A stretch of 64,000 nucleotides of DNA from Vitrella brassicaformis CCMP3155 (taxonomy: Eukaryota > Protista > Chromerida). Location: positions 1-64,000 of the forward strand of contig CDMY01000214.1 in the NCBI GenBank assembly GCA_001179505.1, in the 5' to 3' direction. The notes under the pieces are model-generated. The model was not told the DNA's origin. It searched no databases and saw only the letters and a list, made by a program, of their open reading frames with translations. Both the position numbers and the translations under genes were made by a program. Positions 28,491 to 34,500 of this stretch are shown here, piece by piece. How positions within the stretch are numbered: the first letter of the stretch is position 1; the number at the start of each line of letters is the position of its first letter.

Positions 28491-28769
28491 GCCTTCTTTA
28501 ACCACACCTCAGTCACCGTCTTGTTTTGCATTCCATTGCATGGGTCTCGCTCCTTGCTTTATGTGTATATCCATCGCTGCCTCGCTGCCTAGGTCAAAGG
28601 AGGGATATGTCGGGTGCTGATGTGTACATACATACATACCTGTATAGATACTCAGTCATCCATTCATCCACCCGACTCCTTGGGGGTTGCCTGGCTTCGG
28701 TGCCTGGTGCGTCTGAATGCATGTGAGCAGAGACCTCTACAGTTACCAACCCAGCCACGCACCAATCCA

Positions 28770-31381
28770 TCAGAGTGTCTTGACAGTCATATCAACACGT
28801 CCCAGACAGTAGTTCTCCATCACGGCAGCAGCACACGGCACCAACACAGAGATGGCAAAGGCGGCCAGCATGGCGAGCGGCCGGTCAGAGATCAATACCG
28901 CCAGAGGGAGGGGCAGGTACGCTGACGACCGCGCCCCGAACATGCATACCACCACACCTACCGGCACACACACAACATACGAACAGAATGTGTTTGTGAA
29001 TGGTTTCTGTGTTGACATATGGGAATGCACCTGAGAGGGCGGCCGCGAGCCCAGCGGCTGTGTTGCAGATGGTCGATCGCTCCATGAAGGGGTAGGCGCC
29101 CTCAATGAAGTCACCGAACAGGAAGTTGATAAACAGACCACGCCGAGACAAATGCACATCTGACATACACACACGCGGACACAGACACAGACACACGCAT
29201 CACGCACACACATAGATCTAAGTGTGTCCGGGGTGGCTGTGCGGCTGACCTTCCTTTTGCCTCGGGAAGACGATGTGTGCGAGGCAGAGGCCAAGCGACA
29301 CGCCCACAAGGACGCACTCGTCTATCGCACCAAGTGTGGCAGGGTCCCCCCGCTCCATCTCGACAATGATCAGCGGCAGAATGACGATGTGGTACATGCC
29401 CCTGCCCGACCCCCACCACACAAACCACCCCAGGGCAGCGCCCTTGATGCACCGAAGTAGCATCGACGAGAGGGGCCACGAGTGGAGGATGAAGCGGACA
29501 GATGACGCCAGTTGGCTGCAGATGGGAGAGAGGGCCAGCTCCACCAGACCACCTGCACACACAGACGGAGAGGGGAATGATATGAGCCAGGGGTTTTAGT
29601 GTCTTTGTATGATGTCACCTACCCGTGACAATGCCCGTCCCCCCTGCCGTGGTAATGCTTGCAGCAGTGGCAGGCACACCTGACGATACATACCAAAACA
29701 TACACACACACACACACACACGGTCTGCTCATGTGCCATACCGTATCGACATGCGCAAGCGAGCACCGTTGGTGCGGCCATCCCCCCCAGCAAGCCCGCG
29801 ATGAGCCCAGCGATGACGCCTCCCTGCCCGACGATGCAGCTGCCCGCCAACGCACCCACCAATACACTCGTCTCACCTGTGTGGGTGGACAGAAGCATCC
29901 ATCAGTCTATCGCCAAACTGTGTCCATGGCTGGAGCATCCTACCAAGCTCAGACGTCTGTTGCGCTGCCACCGTGGCCACCACAGTCGGCAAACCACGGG
30001 AACACAACACCTGGACAGACACACACGCACACGCGTGTGCGAAGGCGTGTGTGGTGGGTGTGTTTCTTGTTTGTTGCAGACACACGCACAGGTAAGGTAC
30101 CTGCATCCACATTGACGCAGTGGATTGACCGCTGCTATCGTACACGCGGGACAAAGCCCACTTGACCACCATCACACACACAAACACGGGCAGACAACCT
30201 GACACAGACAGACAAACAAAGAAAGGCACATGCAAATAAGGACATCAAGAGATGCCTAGCTTAGACCAAACCCCATCTGCTGACTGACCTCCAAGCACAG
30301 AGTGCATGGTGTGCAGCAGGTGCCGTATACCCAACACTGTCTGGCCACTGGTAGGCCAGTAGGGCACACGCAACTCACCAGCAACCGACGCTGCAAAACT
30401 ACAGGCACACGCACAATGGTCAATGCCACGTTGTCGTGGGTATGTATGTGTGTGTGTACGAGATGGCCTTCGAAGCAGGTGTGGTGGCCACCGATCCCCC
30501 AGAGCTGCCCACCACCCGCGCCCCCATGCTGATGGCACGGCCTGCAGTGCACACCAGCAGACAAGCACACAAACACAAGGGTCAACGTGGCCATCGATCT
30601 GCGTCTTCATGTGGTCGTCACTTACCGATGAGGTCCCTCCCGTGCCCACGATTGGCAGGCGGACTGTTGGCAGCGATGCCGCGATGAGGGCCTCACGATT
30701 GACGCCGTCAGCATCGAATGAGAGAGCAATCAGACCAGACAGCCGCAGTGACGATGTGATGTTGTCACTGTCGCCATTGCCATTGCCGACGCCGCGAATG
30801 AGGGTGCCGATCTGCCTATCGACGTGACGAGCCACCCCATTGACCTCCTGCAAGGTGCCTGGACGAATCGACGCACAAAGCGGAGTGTCCATGTTGGCGT
30901 TGCTGCACATGTCGCAGCGTGTTGTCTGACCCCTCACAGTGGCGATGGGCGCCCTCCCTGGCCTCGAGGTGACATTGTCAGTCATCAGCTCTTTCTGTGC
31001 GTTGCTGAGGAGCGATGGCGGCCGAACAAATAGCGTGGCCGAAGCTTCTCTGCTGGCAACGTCCAGAGGCACTGCACAGCACACGCAGACACGGATGAGC
31101 AGGCAGGCAGGCAGGCAGATCTGTATGTGTGTCGTGCCAGCGTACACACCGCACCTTGTGTTGCAACGAACTGAATGACATCAAGCGTCATTTTGCAGGC
31201 GGCAAGCTGACCCTCTACCTCATCGAAGAAGAGCTCGGGAGAGGTGTGCCTAGGCACGCACGCAAAAGCAACACACACAACAGATGGAGATCCATCCATC
31301 GATAGAATGATCGAAGGCTGATGCGCACCCGAGGGTCGCTGCGCCTCCGCCACTGCTGCCTACGAGCGCAATTGAGGGCAT
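28770..31381 (-). CDS. Bacterial-type PTS EIIC-like membrane protein with a soluble N-terminal domain (about 11 introns)
   Basis: Spliced translation: MPSIALVGSSGGGAATLG|HTSPELFFDEVEGQL...VIQFVA, GTLQEVN, GLIALSFDADGVN, LPIVGTGGTS, HSVLGGCLPVF, LPTVVATVAAQQTSEL, GGVIAGLIAGLL, VPATAASITTAGGTG, GMYHIVILPLIIVEMERG...LGAIDECVLV, GLFINFLFGDFIEGAYPFM, ARSSAYLPLP. It recalls prokaryotic proteins annotated 'PTS sugar transporter / EIIC'. The frame stayed open at every junction checked. Confidence 0.75.
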
Positions 31382-31506: not shown

Positions 31507-34500
31507 ATGGTGGCCAAAGCGACCGGCCTCCTGAAGGCAGTTTTATCTCTCACCGCAATCTGGCCTTCATGCGTGGTGGATGCGCAGATCGGCAGGGGCG
31601 TGCTCCCACGTCGGCGGCGAGGCATCGTGACGTCCCCCCTCGGCCTCAGCCAGCAGTTCGCAGAGACCCTGGCCACCCTGCAGCACGCCAACACAGCCAA
31701 CTTCGCCAACGGACCTGTCACGTCCTTCAATGGCCTGCCCCCTGCCAGTGTTGCTGCGGCGGCGGCGTCGACGTCCATATCATCGCTGCCGATGGTGGAT
31801 GCGACCACAGTGGAGGACACTGTCGGGCAGCTGGTGAAGAATGACACGAGTGGATCGGCCGACAAAGAGGATGGCAGCAGCAACAAGGACGAGCAGAAGG
31901 GCAGCAGTGACGATGACGAAGGCAGAAGCGGCGGTCTCAAGCTGTGCGACCCTGTGTGTGGTGAGGGTGAGGTGTGTACGGTGTCCCACAGGGGCGGCAG
32001 CGACTTCCTGTCTAAACCGCAGTTCGAATGTCGATGTCTGGAGAGGGGGTACCGCACTGACGCCAGCGGCAAATGTGTCCCACTGGTGCAGTTGAGTGAG
32101 AAGAAACCACCAGCAGCGGCAGCAACAGCACCTGAGGAGAAGAATGATGAAGAGCCCAAGGCGGCTGACGATAAGGCCAAGGAGGCAGACGCAAGTGAGT
32201 GAGCAGGGAGAGGCTGACGTGGCTGATGCAGTACTATTTCTTGCTGCATGTGTTGGTTATCTATCCATATGCAGAGGATGCTGCAGCTGCCTCAGCGGCC
32301 GGAAACAGCGATGGCGATGCCGCTGCCAACAAGACGCTCCACGAAACCCTCGCGTCGAAGACGGTATGCACAATGCATCCGACACGCTCTCATCTCGTCT
32401 CATGTGTGTGGTCGATCTATCTATCAGGAGCTGAGCTCCTTCCTGCTCTTGCTAGAGACCGCCGGGCTTAAGGAGGTGCTGGACCGGCCCTCACCCAAGG
32501 TGACCATCCTGGCACCCTCCAACGACGCTATCAAGTCGCTCGGGCAGGGCGCACTCACCAGCATCGTCGGCGACACTCAAGTACTGTCCAGCCTCCTGGC
32601 TGCCCACATAATGGAGGGCGAGTACACGGCCGACGCCATAGCCGACCTCAAGACGCTGCCCACACTCGGTGGGTGGGAGGTGTCGGTGGAGCGAGAAGGG
32701 GGTCTGGTGCTCGGGGACTCGGCCACCATCCTGCAGCGGGACATCAAGGCGAGCAACGGCCTCATCCAGGTGCTGGATGCGGTCATCCTGCCGCCACCCA
32801 AGGGCCCTGACCTCAAGATGAAGAACAACACATCTAACACGACCACGACAGATACGACAGATACGACGGCAGACGGCGGCCCGAAGCAGATGGAGGACGG
32901 CGACGGCATCGTGTCTATCGCCACGGACCCGCTGCAGCCTGTGGATGACCTCGGAAGTGGTGCTGGTGCAGGTGCAGGTGCTGGTGCGGGTGCAGGGACG
33001 GCTGGGGAGTCTTCGACCCCCGACAACGAGCCTGTGACGATGTTGACGGAGGGCGAGGGAAATGACAATGACACATCGGTGGCAGCAGCAGCAGCAACAG
33101 CAGCAGCCGCACCAGAGCAGAAGGAGGACACCCCCCCGGTATCACCGTTCAATGGCACGCTGGCCGACTTCATCGAACAGGACAAGGTGATTGATTGGCC
33201 CAGTGGCGTGCAAACAGATTGTGTCTATATGTGTGTGGCTCTCCCTCCCTTATTTCCTCCCTCAGGATCTGTTCACCTTCAACAGTGCGATGGTCAAGAC
33301 CATGACGCGTGCCGCCTTCGCCGACACCGAACACGGCCCATACACACTCTTCGCCCCTGTCGACAAGGCATTCGGGCGGCTCACCCAGCAGCAGCTACAG
33401 TTCCTCGGCGAAAGCCCCGACGCACTCACCAAAGTCAGTCAGTCAGCACACCTGCGGAAACACAACACACCCTCGTCCACCCACTCATGTGCGCATCTGT
33501 GTTGTGTTGTGTGTGGTGCAGCTGGTGGCGTACCACGTGGTGAGCGGGAAGCTGACATCTGCAGAGGTGACGGCAGCGAGCAGCAGGGACCTCCCATCGG
33601 TGCTGGGCGACACGGTGACCGTGAGCAGGACCCCTGGGGGCGAGTTGTTGGTCAACGATCGGGCCAAAGTGCTCAGGGCGGACGTCCCCGTGGCCAACGG
33701 GGCCGTCTTCTTCGTCGACAATGTGCTGCTTCCCGTCTCTGTGGACGAGGGAATGGCCACAGCGGCTGCCGAGGCTGAGAAGGCTAAGCAGGCTGCCAAG
33801 CCGCAACAACAGGCCACTGCGAACGGCACTGCTGCGTCTGGTGCGGCTGGTGCTGAGCTGCCGGCACAGAATGAGACGGAGGGTGCCAATCCGAGTGCAG
33901 ATGCAATTCTCTCAGCCGCAGCAGCGGCGGCCTCTGACGCGCTTGGACCTGCGGCACCACGTTTCGCCGGCGAAGACATGCAGCAGAGTGGTGTGGACGA
34001 CGCCATGGGTGCACTGGACATGGCTGGTGGTGGTGGTGGTGGGGGTGGAGATGAGGGTGACGACGGCATGGTGAGCATCGCTACCACGAGTGATGGCGGA
34101 GAGCCTGTGCCGTGGGAGGAAGGGCCGAATGGTGCGAGGAAACCCGGCGGATATGACAACAGCGTCGGCGACGTGCTCGCTTCAAACGAGGTCAGTGACA
34201 GGGAGGGAGGGAGGGAGAAATCTGCTGTGTTGGTTTGGTTCATGTGGGCGTGGCGTTGGTGTCTCGTTTCCTGTTGTCTGCAGGACTACTACACGTATTT
34301 GTCGGCTGTGCGTGCGGTGGGCCTCTTTGACAAGCTCGAAGCAGAAGAGGGTAAGTGCAATGGGTGCACAGACACGGACACATACAGACAGACAGACATG
34401 TGTATGTCTCATGCACTCACTGTCTGTCTGTCTGTCTGTCTACAGGCCCCTTCACGGTGTTTGTCCCGAGTAACGAGGCCTTCGCTTCCCTCGGGGGCGA

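What the first reader, a model, noticed from the sequence alone, without database searches (positions are those of the whole stretch)
28770..31381. Prokaryote-type PTS EIIC-like transporter gene, fully intronised, in a eukaryote
Seen: splicing by hand gives a continuous frame across about 11 GT-AG introns of host style. It encodes a soluble N-domain (ALVGSSGG..., GTLQEVN, SFDADGVN, PIVGTGGTS) fused to a multi-pass membrane domain (YHIVILPLIIVEM..G...LGAID...INFLFGDFIEGAYPFM). Established: PEP-dependent phosphotransferase systems are prokaryotic and need EI, HPr, EIIA and EIIB; no such partner is in this window. Inference from motif recall: it belongs to a poorly characterised bacterial family annotated as a PTS sugar transporter. 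It would then be an old horizontal acquisition repurposed as a phosphorylation-independent or ligand-gated transporter/sensor, an undescribed eukaryotic system.
Basis: partly seen in the sequence, partly recalled or inferred. Interest (0 to 1): 0.85.

Follow-up and report, generated by a model that had tools for sequence, protein, structure and literature searches.

The report
PTS-type EIIC transporter gene in alga
The alga Vitrella brassicaformis has an intron-rich, transcribed nuclear gene for a transporter built on the bacterial sugar-phosphotransferase (PTS EIIC) fold and joined to an unknown N-terminal domain. This matters because PTS parts are held to be absent from eukaryotes, yet relatives also occur in diatoms, pelagophytes and dinoflagellates.

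Summary
A minus-strand gene at 31381..28770 has 13 exons and 12 short GT-AG introns, and it can encode a 564-aa protein.

- **Organism:** the genome is Vitrella brassicaformis.
- **Transcription:** spliced RNA contigs show all 12 introns. At intron 4 they use the first GT of a tandem donor (TCG|GTAA|GTGACG). That choice breaks the conserved frame. The frame-preserving form was not seen, and the deposited model CEL94273.1 is mis-spliced at this point.
- **Family models:** no Pfam or NCBIfam model hits the protein.
- **Membrane domain:** the fold is a Glc-family PTS EIIC fold (Z 19.9 to E. coli IIC-Glc over 318 residues; the next unrelated fold scores 8.7). Profile-profile comparison with E. coli EIICs gives 94-97% probability. 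It pairs the invariant His413 and Glu479 with PtsG H212 and E298, the residues that hold the sugar hydroxyl that PTS phosphorylates.
- **N-domain:** about 200 aa, flavodoxin-like, with three Gly-rich loops. It has no family-wide Cys or His and resembles no EIIA, EIIB or other known family.
- **Bacterial relatives:** the same two-domain family is widespread in bacteria (362 loci), where it is labelled "PTS sugar transporter". It usually sits beside a sugar-phosphate-type TIM-barrel gene and not beside PTS genes.
- **Eukaryotic relatives:** these sequences form one clan, separate from the bacteria.
- **Function:** untested. My best reading is a solute transporter that works without the PEP relay.

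The scan has not reported this on other DNA.

The parts
28770..31381 (-). Whole coding region: 13 exons and 12 GT-AG introns giving a 564-aa protein in the frame-preserving splice form
   Evidence: spliced RNA contigs
31329..31381 (-). Exon 1: ATG at 31381, first Gly-rich loop GSSGGG (S9-G13)
   Evidence: junction 31328|31249 seen in RNA contigs X1 and X7
31155..31249 (-). Exon 2
   Evidence: junctions in X1 and X7
30931..31071 (-). Exon 3
   Evidence: the 72-nt intron 3 is in frame and stop-free but is spliced out in X7
30622..30858 (-). Exon 4 (frame-preserving form), holding the second Gly-rich loop GTGGTS. RNA contigs end this exon at 30626 instead
30621..30626 (-). Tandem 5' splice site TCG|GTAA|GTGACG. 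The first GT (84-nt intron) is seen in RNA contigs and breaks the frame. The second GT (80-nt intron) is needed for the conserved protein
   Evidence: spacing to the next motif matches homologues only with the 80-nt form
30460..30541 (-). Exon 5: third Gly-rich loop GSSGGSVATT; internal Met181 at 30527-30525, where the transcript ORF P0001 starts
30289..30398 (-). Exon 6. The deposited model starts it at 30390, which RNA does not support
30101..30198 (-). Exon 7: first transmembrane helix of the EIIC domain
29944..30010 (-). Exon 8
29742..29876 (-). Exon 9
29623..29679 (-). Exon 10
29250..29552 (-). Exon 11: motif GxYH...LP...ExE...GAID. His413 is at 29391-29389, Glu423 at 29361-29359, Asp436 at 29322-29320
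29031..29159 (-). Exon 12: motif GDFIE..YPFM. Glu479 is at 29103-29101 and pairs with PtsG E298
28770..28957 (-). Exon 13: motif SSAYLPLP, last helices, stop codon at 28772-28770
28712..28769 (-). At least 58 nt of 3' untranslated region covered by RNA contigs
   Evidence: table 8

Best explanation
This is a real, spliced nuclear gene of Vitrella brassicaformis. It encodes a two-domain membrane protein.

**N-domain.** It is cytosolic, about 200 aa, and flavodoxin-like. Three glycine-rich loops (GSSGGG, GTGGTS, GSSGGS) sit at the ends of its strands. That arrangement is typical of phosphate or anion binding sites.

**C-domain.** It is a homologue of the glucose-glucoside family PTS enzyme IIC, an elevator-type carrier. 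It keeps the His (H413) and Glu (E479) that hold the sugar OH-6 in E. coli IIC-Glc.

**Family.** The protein belongs to a family with no Pfam model that is common in bacteria. There it usually forms an operon with a sugar-phosphate-type TIM-barrel enzyme and a GntR/UTRA regulator, and it is not next to PTS genes. The family also forms a single clan in algae (diatoms, pelagophyte, Symbiodiniaceae, Vitrella, picoeukaryotes).

**Inferred mechanism (not shown).** It carries a small polar, sugar-like solute across a membrane by the EIIC elevator mechanism, without the EI/HPr/EIIA/EIIB relay. The fused N-domain replaces EIIB as a phosphate- or ligand-binding accessory that gates or couples transport. 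The eukaryotic clan most likely stems from one old bacterium-to-alga transfer.

**In Vitrella.** The assembled mRNA uses a splice donor that breaks the frame. The full-length protein can therefore come only from a splice form that I did not observe.
For: **Gene and splicing.**

**Organism.** (CEL94273.1 of Vitrella brassicaformis CCMP3155 is in the same 90% cluster).

**Fold.**
- AF2 model of P0001: pLDDT 91.6. Full-length relative: pLDDT 94.2.
- VIA-align: 8qsr_A Z 19.9 over 318 aa, 6bvg_B 18.3, 9lgt_B 18.2, 3qnq_A 16.7; the next hit scores 8.7.
- Foldseek: the top 8 hits are all EIIC, E from 8.5e-6.

**Sequence.**
- hhalign of the family against five E. coli EIICs: probability 94.3% (E 1e-7, local) and 97.3% (E 6.6e-11, global). 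It pairs H233/E299 of P0001 (H413/E479 of the model) with PtsG H212/E298.
- Those PtsG residues coordinate glucose OH-6 (PMC11393339).
- Bacterial members hit TIGR01995/01996/00852 at E 1e-8 to 2e-14.

**Family.**
- 139 representatives and more than 200 hits.
- Bacterial branch. 362 loci in GTDB genomes.
- ESM Atlas bacterial clusters named 'PTS sugar transporter': TM 0.73/0.76 over 497 aa.

**Bacterial neighbours.** The TIM barrel lies directly downstream in 40 of 77 loci, GntR-UTRA is present in 25, and HPr/Crr/PtsG-like genes are nearby in 1 of 80.

**Tree.** Eukaryote/bacteria bipartition with SH-aLRT 99 in two trees.

**N-domain.**
- Invariant GSSGG, D57, N88, S115, GxGG, T168.
- No family-wide Cys or His.
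- No N-terminal extension relative to bacterial members.
Against: - No transport, binding or localisation data exist for any member, bacterial or algal.
- Pfam PTS_EIIC models do not hit.
- The N-domain has only generic structural matches (Z 8-10). It shows no profile similarity to any tested domain, so its role is a guess.
- The bacterial TIM-barrel neighbour acts on phosphorylated substrates by family resemblance. That argues that phosphorylation is part of the pathway, which fits the rival (group translocation) as well as or better than this reading.
- The Vitrella RNA contigs, and the 384-aa 'complete' transcript ORF, fit a frame-broken mRNA.
- Absence of EI/HPr was tested only in this 64-kb window.
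- The tree is unrooted, so the direction of transfer is inferred.
Confidence: 0.6

Rival explanations
1. Self-contained group translocator. The N-domain is a new kind of phosphoryl-transfer or kinase module, using a nucleotide or another donor. It phosphorylates the sugar held by His413/Glu479 as the sugar reaches the cytosolic side. The protein would then do the whole enzyme II job without EI/HPr, in bacteria and algae alike.
For: - The OH-6-holding His and Glu are invariant across the family.
- Three Gly-rich loops with invariant Ser, Thr and Asp are typical of phosphate sites.
- The conserved bacterial operon partner is a TIM barrel resembling enzymes of phosphorylated sugars: HxlA, class II aldolases, NanE and RPE, all sub-threshold.
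- GntR-UTRA regulators are frequent neighbours.
- PTS genes are not adjacent.
Against: - There is no resemblance to any kinase, EIIA, EIIB, SIS or Dha domain by Pfam, NCBIfam, hhalign or fold.
- There is no conserved Cys or His acceptor.
- There is no Walker-type motif.
- There are no biochemical data.
Confidence: 0.2
2. The gene is a sensor or transceptor, not a carrier. The EIIC domain binds an external ligand and the N-domain relays the signal.
For: The fused cytosolic domain of unknown function and the lack of a PTS relay allow it.
Against: - The whole elevator architecture and substrate-site residues are conserved, as in carriers.
- The bacterial context is catabolic (a TIM-barrel enzyme in the same operon) and not signalling.
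- The N-domain has no recognisable signalling fold.
Confidence: 0.08
3. In Vitrella itself the locus is unproductive or decaying. The dominant mRNA is frame-broken at the tandem donor. It yields at most a 246-codon N-terminal product, or an EIIC-only product from Met181, and no working fusion protein.
For: - The X7 contig (1739 nt, nearly the whole CDS) skips 84 nt at intron 4.
- The X1 contig extends one matching base beyond exon 5, as expected for the same joint.
- The MMETSP ORF is a 384-aa 'complete' ORF, which is what the 84-nt form predicts.
Against: - All 13 exons are open.
- Every family-wide invariant residue is kept in both halves.
- Spacing across the junction matches homologues exactly with the second GT.
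- GTGACG is as typical as the gene's other donors.
- Logan contigs drop minor variants, so the 80-nt form is not excluded (tool note).
Confidence: 0.15
4. Bacterial contamination, or an assembly artefact, in the algal genome.
For: None beyond the bacterial affinity of the family.
Against: - The gene has twelve spliceosomal GT-AG introns, all removed in RNA contigs.
- Its GC matches the host.
- It lies inside a 64-kb eukaryotic window.
- Its nearest relatives are eukaryotic.
Confidence: 0.01

Closest known systems
E. coli PtsG (IICB-Glc; PDB 8qsr) and V. cholerae IIC-Glc (9lgt): glucose-glucoside family PTS enzyme IIC
   Same: - Same fold over about 320 residues (Z 19.9 and 18.2).
- Profile-profile homology of 94-97%.
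- The His of hairpin HP1b (H212) and the Glu of the GITE motif (E298) that hold the sugar OH-6 are matched by invariant family residues.
   Different: - Sequence identity is about 13%, and no Pfam or NCBIfam model is passed.
- PtsG residues E202, R203 and K257 are not matched.
- There is no C-terminal EIIB domain with a phospho-cysteine. An unrelated N-terminal flavodoxin-like domain takes its place.
- No EI, HPr or EIIA context.
- It occurs in eukaryotes, with introns.
B. cereus MalT (6bvg, 5iws) and ChbC (3qnq) EIIC transporters
   Same: Same elevator-type EIIC fold (Z 18.3 and 16.7 over about 320 residues).
   Different: hhalign against a single E. coli ChbC sequence is not significant (5%). 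The family sits nearer the Glc/Bgl branch than the Lac/Chb branch.
Unnamed bacterial family labelled 'PTS sugar transporter' (for example Tsukamurella soli, Bacillus sp. 03113, Mycoplasmatota MAGs) or 'fructose-specific PTS IIC' (IMG)
   Same: - Same length and two-domain architecture, and the same motifs in both domains.
- Whole-length structural match with TM 0.73/0.76.
- The Vitrella protein is a member of this family.
   Different: - The bacterial genes are intronless and usually sit in an operon with a TIM-barrel enzyme and a GntR regulator.
- The algal clan is a separate branch (SH-aLRT 99).
- It carries its own variants of the loops: GSSGGGTATLGH with a eukaryote-only His, and NAGGSVATT in place of SGTTGTTN.
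- No member of either branch has been characterised, as far as my literature searches show.

Membership tests
PTS enzyme IIC, glucose-glucoside family / GFL superfamily (Pfam PF02378; TC 4.A.1) | EIIC fold: about 10 membrane helices plus re-entrant hairpins, elevator type | tested here: met
   AF2 pLDDT 91.6. Top four VIA-align hits are all EIIC (Z 16.7-19.9, 318-321 aa aligned); the next fold scores Z 8.7. The Foldseek top 8 are all EIIC. The result repeats with a full-length relative.
PTS enzyme IIC, glucose-glucoside family / GFL superfamily (Pfam PF02378; TC 4.A.1) | Match to the curated sequence models (Pfam PTS_EIIC PF02378 or PTS_EIIC_2 PF13303; NCBIfam EIIC models) above their cut-offs | tested here: not met
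   No Pfam hit even at E<=10 for the exons, 10 eukaryotic members and 10 bacterial members. No NCBIfam hit for eukaryotic members. Bacterial members hit TIGR01995/01996/00852 only far below the cut-offs (42-53 bits against 291-615).
PTS enzyme IIC, glucose-glucoside family / GFL superfamily (Pfam PF02378; TC 4.A.1) | Detectable sequence homology to bona fide EIICs | tested here: met
   hhalign of family alignment A3 (Vitrella sequence first) against PtsG+NagE+BglF+TreB+MalX gives probability 94.3% (E 1e-7, 263 columns, local) and 97.3% (E 6.6e-11, 333 columns, global). Sub-threshold NCBIfam hits for bacterial members reach E 2e-14.
PTS enzyme IIC, glucose-glucoside family / GFL superfamily (Pfam PF02378; TC 4.A.1) | Substrate-site His (HP1b) and Glu (GITE motif) that hold the hydroxyl to be phosphorylated | tested here: met
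   Invariant H233 and E299 of P0001 (H413 and E479 of the model) align with PtsG H212 and E298 (H233 also). Their role in PtsG comes from PMC11393339. The residue-level pairing rests on a remote alignment, not on a superposition that I could inspect.
PTS enzyme IIC, glucose-glucoside family / GFL superfamily (Pfam PF02378; TC 4.A.1) | Works with an EIIB domain (phospho-Cys) and with EIIA, HPr and EI | tested here: not met
   - The N-domain has no family-wide Cys or His (best columns 68% and 71%, the His in eukaryotes only).
- It shows no similarity to ChbB, GatB, UlaB, ManX, Glc-type IIB, Crr, HPr or DhaKLM and has no specific fold match.
- No EI, HPr or Crr lies in the window.
- PTS genes are adjacent in 1 of 80 bacterial loci.
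- Genome-wide absence in Vitrella could not be tested.
PTS enzyme IIC, glucose-glucoside family / GFL superfamily (Pfam PF02378; TC 4.A.1) | PEP-dependent transport with phosphorylation of the substrate | not testable with these tools
   Needs biochemistry.
Uncharacterised N-domain + EIIC family ('PTS sugar transporter' of bacterial annotations; no Pfam model) | Architecture: a flavodoxin-like N-domain of about 190 aa with three Gly-rich loops, followed by an EIIC domain; 510-610 aa in total | tested here: met
   The model is 564 aa. Relatives' architecture. Alignments.
Uncharacterised N-domain + EIIC family ('PTS sugar transporter' of bacterial annotations; no Pfam model) | Family-wide invariant motifs: GSSGG; GxGG(S/T); G..T..T(R); GxYH...LP...ExE; GAxD; G(D/T)F(I/V)E..YPFM; AY.P | tested here: met
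   All are present in the Vitrella model.
Uncharacterised N-domain + EIIC family ('PTS sugar transporter' of bacterial annotations; no Pfam model) | Significant direct sequence similarity to bacterial members | tested here: met
   phmmer with one 100-aa exon finds bacterial P0061, P0093 and P0121 at E 1e-6 to 1e-4 against 1.8 billion proteins (contexts). The family HMM scores them at 254-326 bits.
Uncharacterised N-domain + EIIC family ('PTS sugar transporter' of bacterial annotations; no Pfam model) | Adjacent TIM-barrel partner gene (seen in about half of the bacterial loci) | tested here: not met
   A profile of the partner finds nothing in the window or in eukaryotic loci L002, L003 and L010. 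Adjacency is not expected in a eukaryote, and the rest of the genome was not searched.

The most novel reading that the evidence does not exclude
The fused N-domain is a new kind of phosphoryl-donor module that replaces EI, HPr, EIIA and EIIB. The family would then be a one-polypeptide group translocator, and algae would import and phosphorylate a sugar-like nutrient by a PTS-derived mechanism thought not to exist in eukaryotes.
Probability: 0.15. Interest if true: 0.9.

Novelty: new variant of a known kind. Interest (0 to 1): 0.66.

Why it matters
- Reviews still state that the PTS is absent from eukaryotes (PMC13106763). Here its membrane core, with the substrate-site residues intact, sits in intron-bearing nuclear genes of several ecologically dominant algal groups.
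- It shows that an EIIC elevator carrier can be kept for long periods without the PEP relay. It also points to a candidate route for uptake of an organic solute (osmotrophy) in diatoms, dinoflagellate symbionts and chromerids.
- It brings to light a large bacterial family (362 or more species genomes) with an orphan N-domain and a conserved TIM-barrel partner. These genes are currently mislabelled as a fructose PTS component, a histidine-biosynthesis protein or a thiamine-phosphate synthase.
- The bacterial members make the mechanism directly testable.
- It corrects the deposited Vitrella gene model.

Tried and rejected
- **Pfam and NCBIfam on exons and full-length eukaryotic members:** nothing.
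- **ESM Atlas by features:** nothing for exon 11 or for the N-domain.
- **tblastn of exon 11 against plasmids:** nothing.
- **PDB sequence profile search:** nothing.
- **Prokaryote genome scan with eukaryote-derived peptide patterns:** nothing. It succeeded only with a bacterial alignment.
- **hhalign against a single PtsG sequence:** too weak (0.4% and 9%). It needed a five-sequence EIIC profile.
- **N-domain against ChbA/B, ManX, DhaK/L/M, UlaB/C, GatA/B, GmhA (SIS), NagB, YieK, Crr, HPr and Glc-type IIB:** all 2.5% or less.
- **Idea that natural split forms exist (P0071 and P0123 start where P0001 starts):** rejected. In L013 the N-domain continues in frame upstream, so P0071 is a truncated gene call.
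- **Dinoflagellate names taken from the P0198 cluster:** rejected as such. Those members are unrelated B-box proteins (branch length 9.2, no BLAST hit). P0198 was then shown to be Symbiodiniaceae through its neighbour gene.
- **The 274-aa ORF upstream of P0017 as a TIM-barrel partner:** rejected. It is low-complexity sequence with no profile hit.
- **Search for algal homologues of the TIM-barrel partner:** the list was saturated by bacteria and was uninformative.
- **Spliced 564-aa model:** it has no reference, so I did not submit it to any tool. I used P0001 (residues 181-564), P0236:1-174 implicitly via alignments, and relatives instead.
Full report
**1. What is in the sequence**

The gene lies on the minus strand. 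Listing every frame-compatible GT(GC)-AG junction between the open segments leaves essentially one canonical choice per gap. Joining them gives 1695 nt, or 564 codons plus a stop, in 13 exons and 12 introns of 61-90 nt, all GT...AG. Gene GC (0.579) equals the window's (0.588).

**2. Whose genome, and is the gene expressed**

An exhaustive HMMER search with the 100-aa exon 11 found a 384-aa protein identical over the exon (P0001), plus 138 further representatives.
- P0001 is an MMETSP transcript ORF. Its 90% cluster holds CEL94273.1, an 'unnamed protein product' of Vitrella brassicaformis CCMP3155.
- P0001 equals my model residues 181-564 exactly.
- The deposited 560-aa model differs only in a 28-residue stretch that is read out of frame. 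Homologues there show the conserved VGNAGGSVATT-type loop that my splice restores.

Laying public contigs on the gene showed spliced contigs in two runs: X1 (1234 nt) and X7 (1739 nt, nearly the whole CDS plus 58 nt of 3' UTR). All 12 introns appear as CT..AC skips, and 11 lie exactly at my junctions. The in-frame, stop-free intron 3 is removed.

The exception is intron 4. The contig skips 84 nt and uses TCG|GTAAGT. The conserved frame needs the GT four bases downstream (TAA|GTGACG, 80 nt).
- With the 84-nt form, the ORF from the ATG ends after 246 codons in exon 7 (30174). The longest ORF then becomes the 384-aa P0001, which explains why the transcriptome ORF is 'complete' at that length.
- CEL94273.1 uses the 84-nt intron and regains the frame with an acceptor 8 nt inside exon 6. 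Neither RNA contig supports that acceptor.
- Contigs drop minor variants, so the 80-nt form is not excluded. I have not seen it.

**3. What the protein is**

No Pfam or NCBIfam model matches any exon, P0001, P0236 or eight other full-length eukaryotic relatives, even at E<=10.

Structure gives a positive answer. With a 90-sequence alignment, AlphaFold2 models P0001 at pLDDT 91.6.
- An all-against-representatives structural search ranks four PTS EIIC transporters first: E. coli IIC-Glc 8qsr Z 19.9 over 318 aligned residues, B. cereus MalT 18.3, V. cholerae IIC-Glc 18.2 and ChbC 16.7. The next, unrelated fold scores Z 8.7.
- Foldseek independently puts eight EIIC entries first.
- A full-length relative (P0010, pLDDT 94.2) gives the same result for residues 195-547.

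Sequence evidence followed once bacterial members were found.
- Bacterial members hit NCBIfam Bgl/Scr/Tre/Glc EIIC models at E 1e-8 to 2e-14, far below the curated cut-offs.
- A profile of the whole family, with the Vitrella sequence first, aligns to a five-member E. coli EIIC profile with 94.3% probability (E 1e-7, local) and 97.3% (E 6.6e-11, global; 333 columns).
- That alignment pairs the family-invariant His (H233 of P0001, H413 of the model, codon 29391-29389) with PtsG H212. It pairs the invariant Glu of G(D/T)F(I/V)E (E299, or E479, codon 29103-29101) with PtsG E298. In the 2024 cryo-EM study these residues coordinate glucose OH-6, the hydroxyl that is phosphorylated (PMC11393339).
- The family is nearer the Glc/Bgl branch than the Lac/Chb branch. 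IMG's 'fructose-specific' label is probably wrong.

**4. The N-domain**

Residues 1 to about 190 form a flavodoxin-like alpha/beta domain. Its only structural matches are generic (Z 8-10: a uroporphyrinogen-III synthase half, periplasmic-binding and LacI sub-domains, flavodoxins, receiver domains). Foldseek finds nothing specific.

Across 99 full-length members the invariant residues are GSSGG, G22, D57, N88, S115, GxGG, S142, G160, T164 and T168 (P0010 numbering).
- No Cys or His column is conserved family-wide.
- The best His column (in TLGH) is conserved in 70 of 74 eukaryotic-branch sequences and in 0 of 25 bacterial sequences.
- Profile comparisons with E. coli ChbA/B, ManX, GatA/B, UlaB/C, Glc-type IIB, Crr, HPr, DhaK/L/M, GmhA (SIS), NagB and YieK are all 2.5% or less.

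It is therefore not a recognisable EIIA or EIIB. Glycine-rich loops that follow beta-strands are the usual signature of phosphate or anion sites; that reading is an inference. The N-terminus starts at the same point as in bacteria and has no presequence. An N-terminal plastid or mitochondrial signal is therefore unlikely, and the domain should face the cytosol, as the N-terminus of EIIC does. This also is inference.

**5. The family**

A shape search of the ESM Atlas found bacterial clusters named 'PTS sugar transporter' that match over the whole length (TM 0.73/0.76, 497 residues).
- Divergent hits lie in plainly prokaryotic contexts.
- A search from one of them returned Streptomyces, Tsukamurella, Brooklawnia, Treponema, Mycoplasmatota and Bacillus proteins with those names.
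- A scan of one genome per prokaryotic species confirmed 362 loci in Bacillota, Mycoplasmatota, Spirochaetota, Chloroflexota, Actinomycetota and Bacteroidota.

In 40 of 77 loci with room, a gene of about 279 aa follows directly on the same strand, with a gap of 0-186 nt.
- It is 53% identical between two unrelated loci.
- It resembles phosphate-binding TIM barrels, all below threshold: 3-hexulose-6-phosphate synthase, class II aldolases, NanE, ribulose-phosphate epimerase, TMP-TENI, His_biosynth and DUF7916.

GntR-UTRA regulators occur in 25 loci. HPr-, Crr- or PtsG-like genes are near in only 1 of 80 loci.

On the eukaryotic side, named members come from diatoms (Fragilaria, Fragilariopsis, Seminavis, Mayamaea, Amphora, Attheya, Grammatophora), Pelagomonas, Fugacium kawagutii and MMETSP transcriptomes.
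- A GC-rich subclade lies beside SET, PhyH and ion-channel genes, so it is eukaryotic.
- P0198 lies on a 1.29-Mb contig whose neighbouring B-box gene is 97% identical to Symbiodiniaceae proteins.

Two maximum-likelihood trees separate all labelled eukaryotic sequences from all labelled bacterial sequences with SH-aLRT 99.
- Vitrella is a deep, isolated branch. Its closest relative is a Tara metagenome sequence at 40-42% identity.
- The Symbiodiniaceae copies nest within diatoms.
- The trees are unrooted. One bacterium-to-alga transfer, followed by vertical descent and some alga-to-alga movement, is the most economical reading, but it is not proven.

**6. Partners**

tblastn of E. coli EI, HPr, Crr and PtsG, and of the TIM-barrel partner, against the window gives only chance hits. 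A profile of the partner finds nothing in the window or in three eukaryotic loci. The rest of the genome could not be searched. The scan's notes hold no PTS-related finding in this genome.

**7. How it most likely works**

*Shown.* It is an expressed, intron-rich nuclear gene. It has the EIIC fold and EIIC homology with the substrate-site His and Glu conserved. It carries a fused orphan N-domain. It belongs to a bacterial-algal family. The bacterial genes sit in an operon with a sugar-phosphate-type enzyme and without PTS genes.

*Inferred.* It is an elevator-type carrier for a small sugar-like solute that works without the PEP relay, and the N-domain acts as a phosphate- or ligand-binding accessory. 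My confidence is about 0.6 for the whole statement. It is about 0.9 for the identity part and about 0.45 for the relay-free carrier part.

*Main rival (0.2).* The N-domain is itself a new phosphoryl donor, which would make the family a one-chain group translocator. The TIM-barrel neighbour and the kept OH-6 site fit this at least as well.

*Separate caveat for Vitrella (0.15).* The dominant mRNA may be unproductive.

**8. Novelty**

Literature searches found no paper linking EIIC to algae or describing this family. A 2026 paper still states that the PTS is 'absent in eukaryotes'. One automated annotation (Seminavis robusta, 'phosphotransferase system component') shows that pipelines have brushed against it. 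I rate it a new variant of a known kind: an EIIC carrier with a new fused domain, established in eukaryotes.

Noticed in passing
window 30390-30626 (exons 4-6): The deposited model CEL94273.1 (P0236) reads 28 residues of exon 5 out of frame. It uses the 84-nt intron 4 and then an acceptor at 30390 that no RNA contig shows.
   Followed up: yes
window 30621-30626: There is a tandem 5' splice site four bases apart (GTAAGTGACG). The consensus-like first GT is the one seen in RNA and is the unproductive one. This could be regulated unproductive splicing.
   Followed up: partly
window 31099-31120 (intron 2) and 29689-29729 (intron 9): A (GCAG)n-like run in intron 2 and an (AC)n run in intron 9 attract many foreign contigs. 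This shows as depth spikes, chimeric 'joints' such as 29189->31099, and many loose ends. These are repeats shared across the genome and not rearrangements.
   Followed up: partly
L003/L004 8001-9416; P0167: The Symbiodiniaceae copies of the family are single-exon. They group inside diatom sequences (58% identity to Fragilaria, 37% to Vitrella), which hints at an alga-to-alga transfer rather than descent shared with Vitrella.
   Followed up: partly
cluster of P0198: The 90% cluster listing mixes the transporter with unrelated dinoflagellate B-box proteins encoded 3.9 kb downstream. The likely cause is a fused gene model. Names taken from cluster members can mislead.
   Followed up: yes
L006:11599-12435, L009:11560-12393 and 38 further loci: The conserved bacterial partner is an uncharacterised TIM-barrel family. 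Sources variously name it 'histidine biosynthesis protein', 'HisF' or 'thiamine phosphate synthase' (700 hits). These names are probably wrong.
   Followed up: partly
window 31507-32200 (+ strand): A divergently oriented open frame starts about 125 nt upstream of the transporter's ATG. It begins with a hydrophobic, signal-like N-terminus. I did not examine it.
   Followed up: no
L008 2311-2589: In Bacillus sp. 03113 an HPr gene lies 7.4 kb upstream of the family gene. This is the only PTS gene near any of the 80 bacterial loci.
   Followed up: partly
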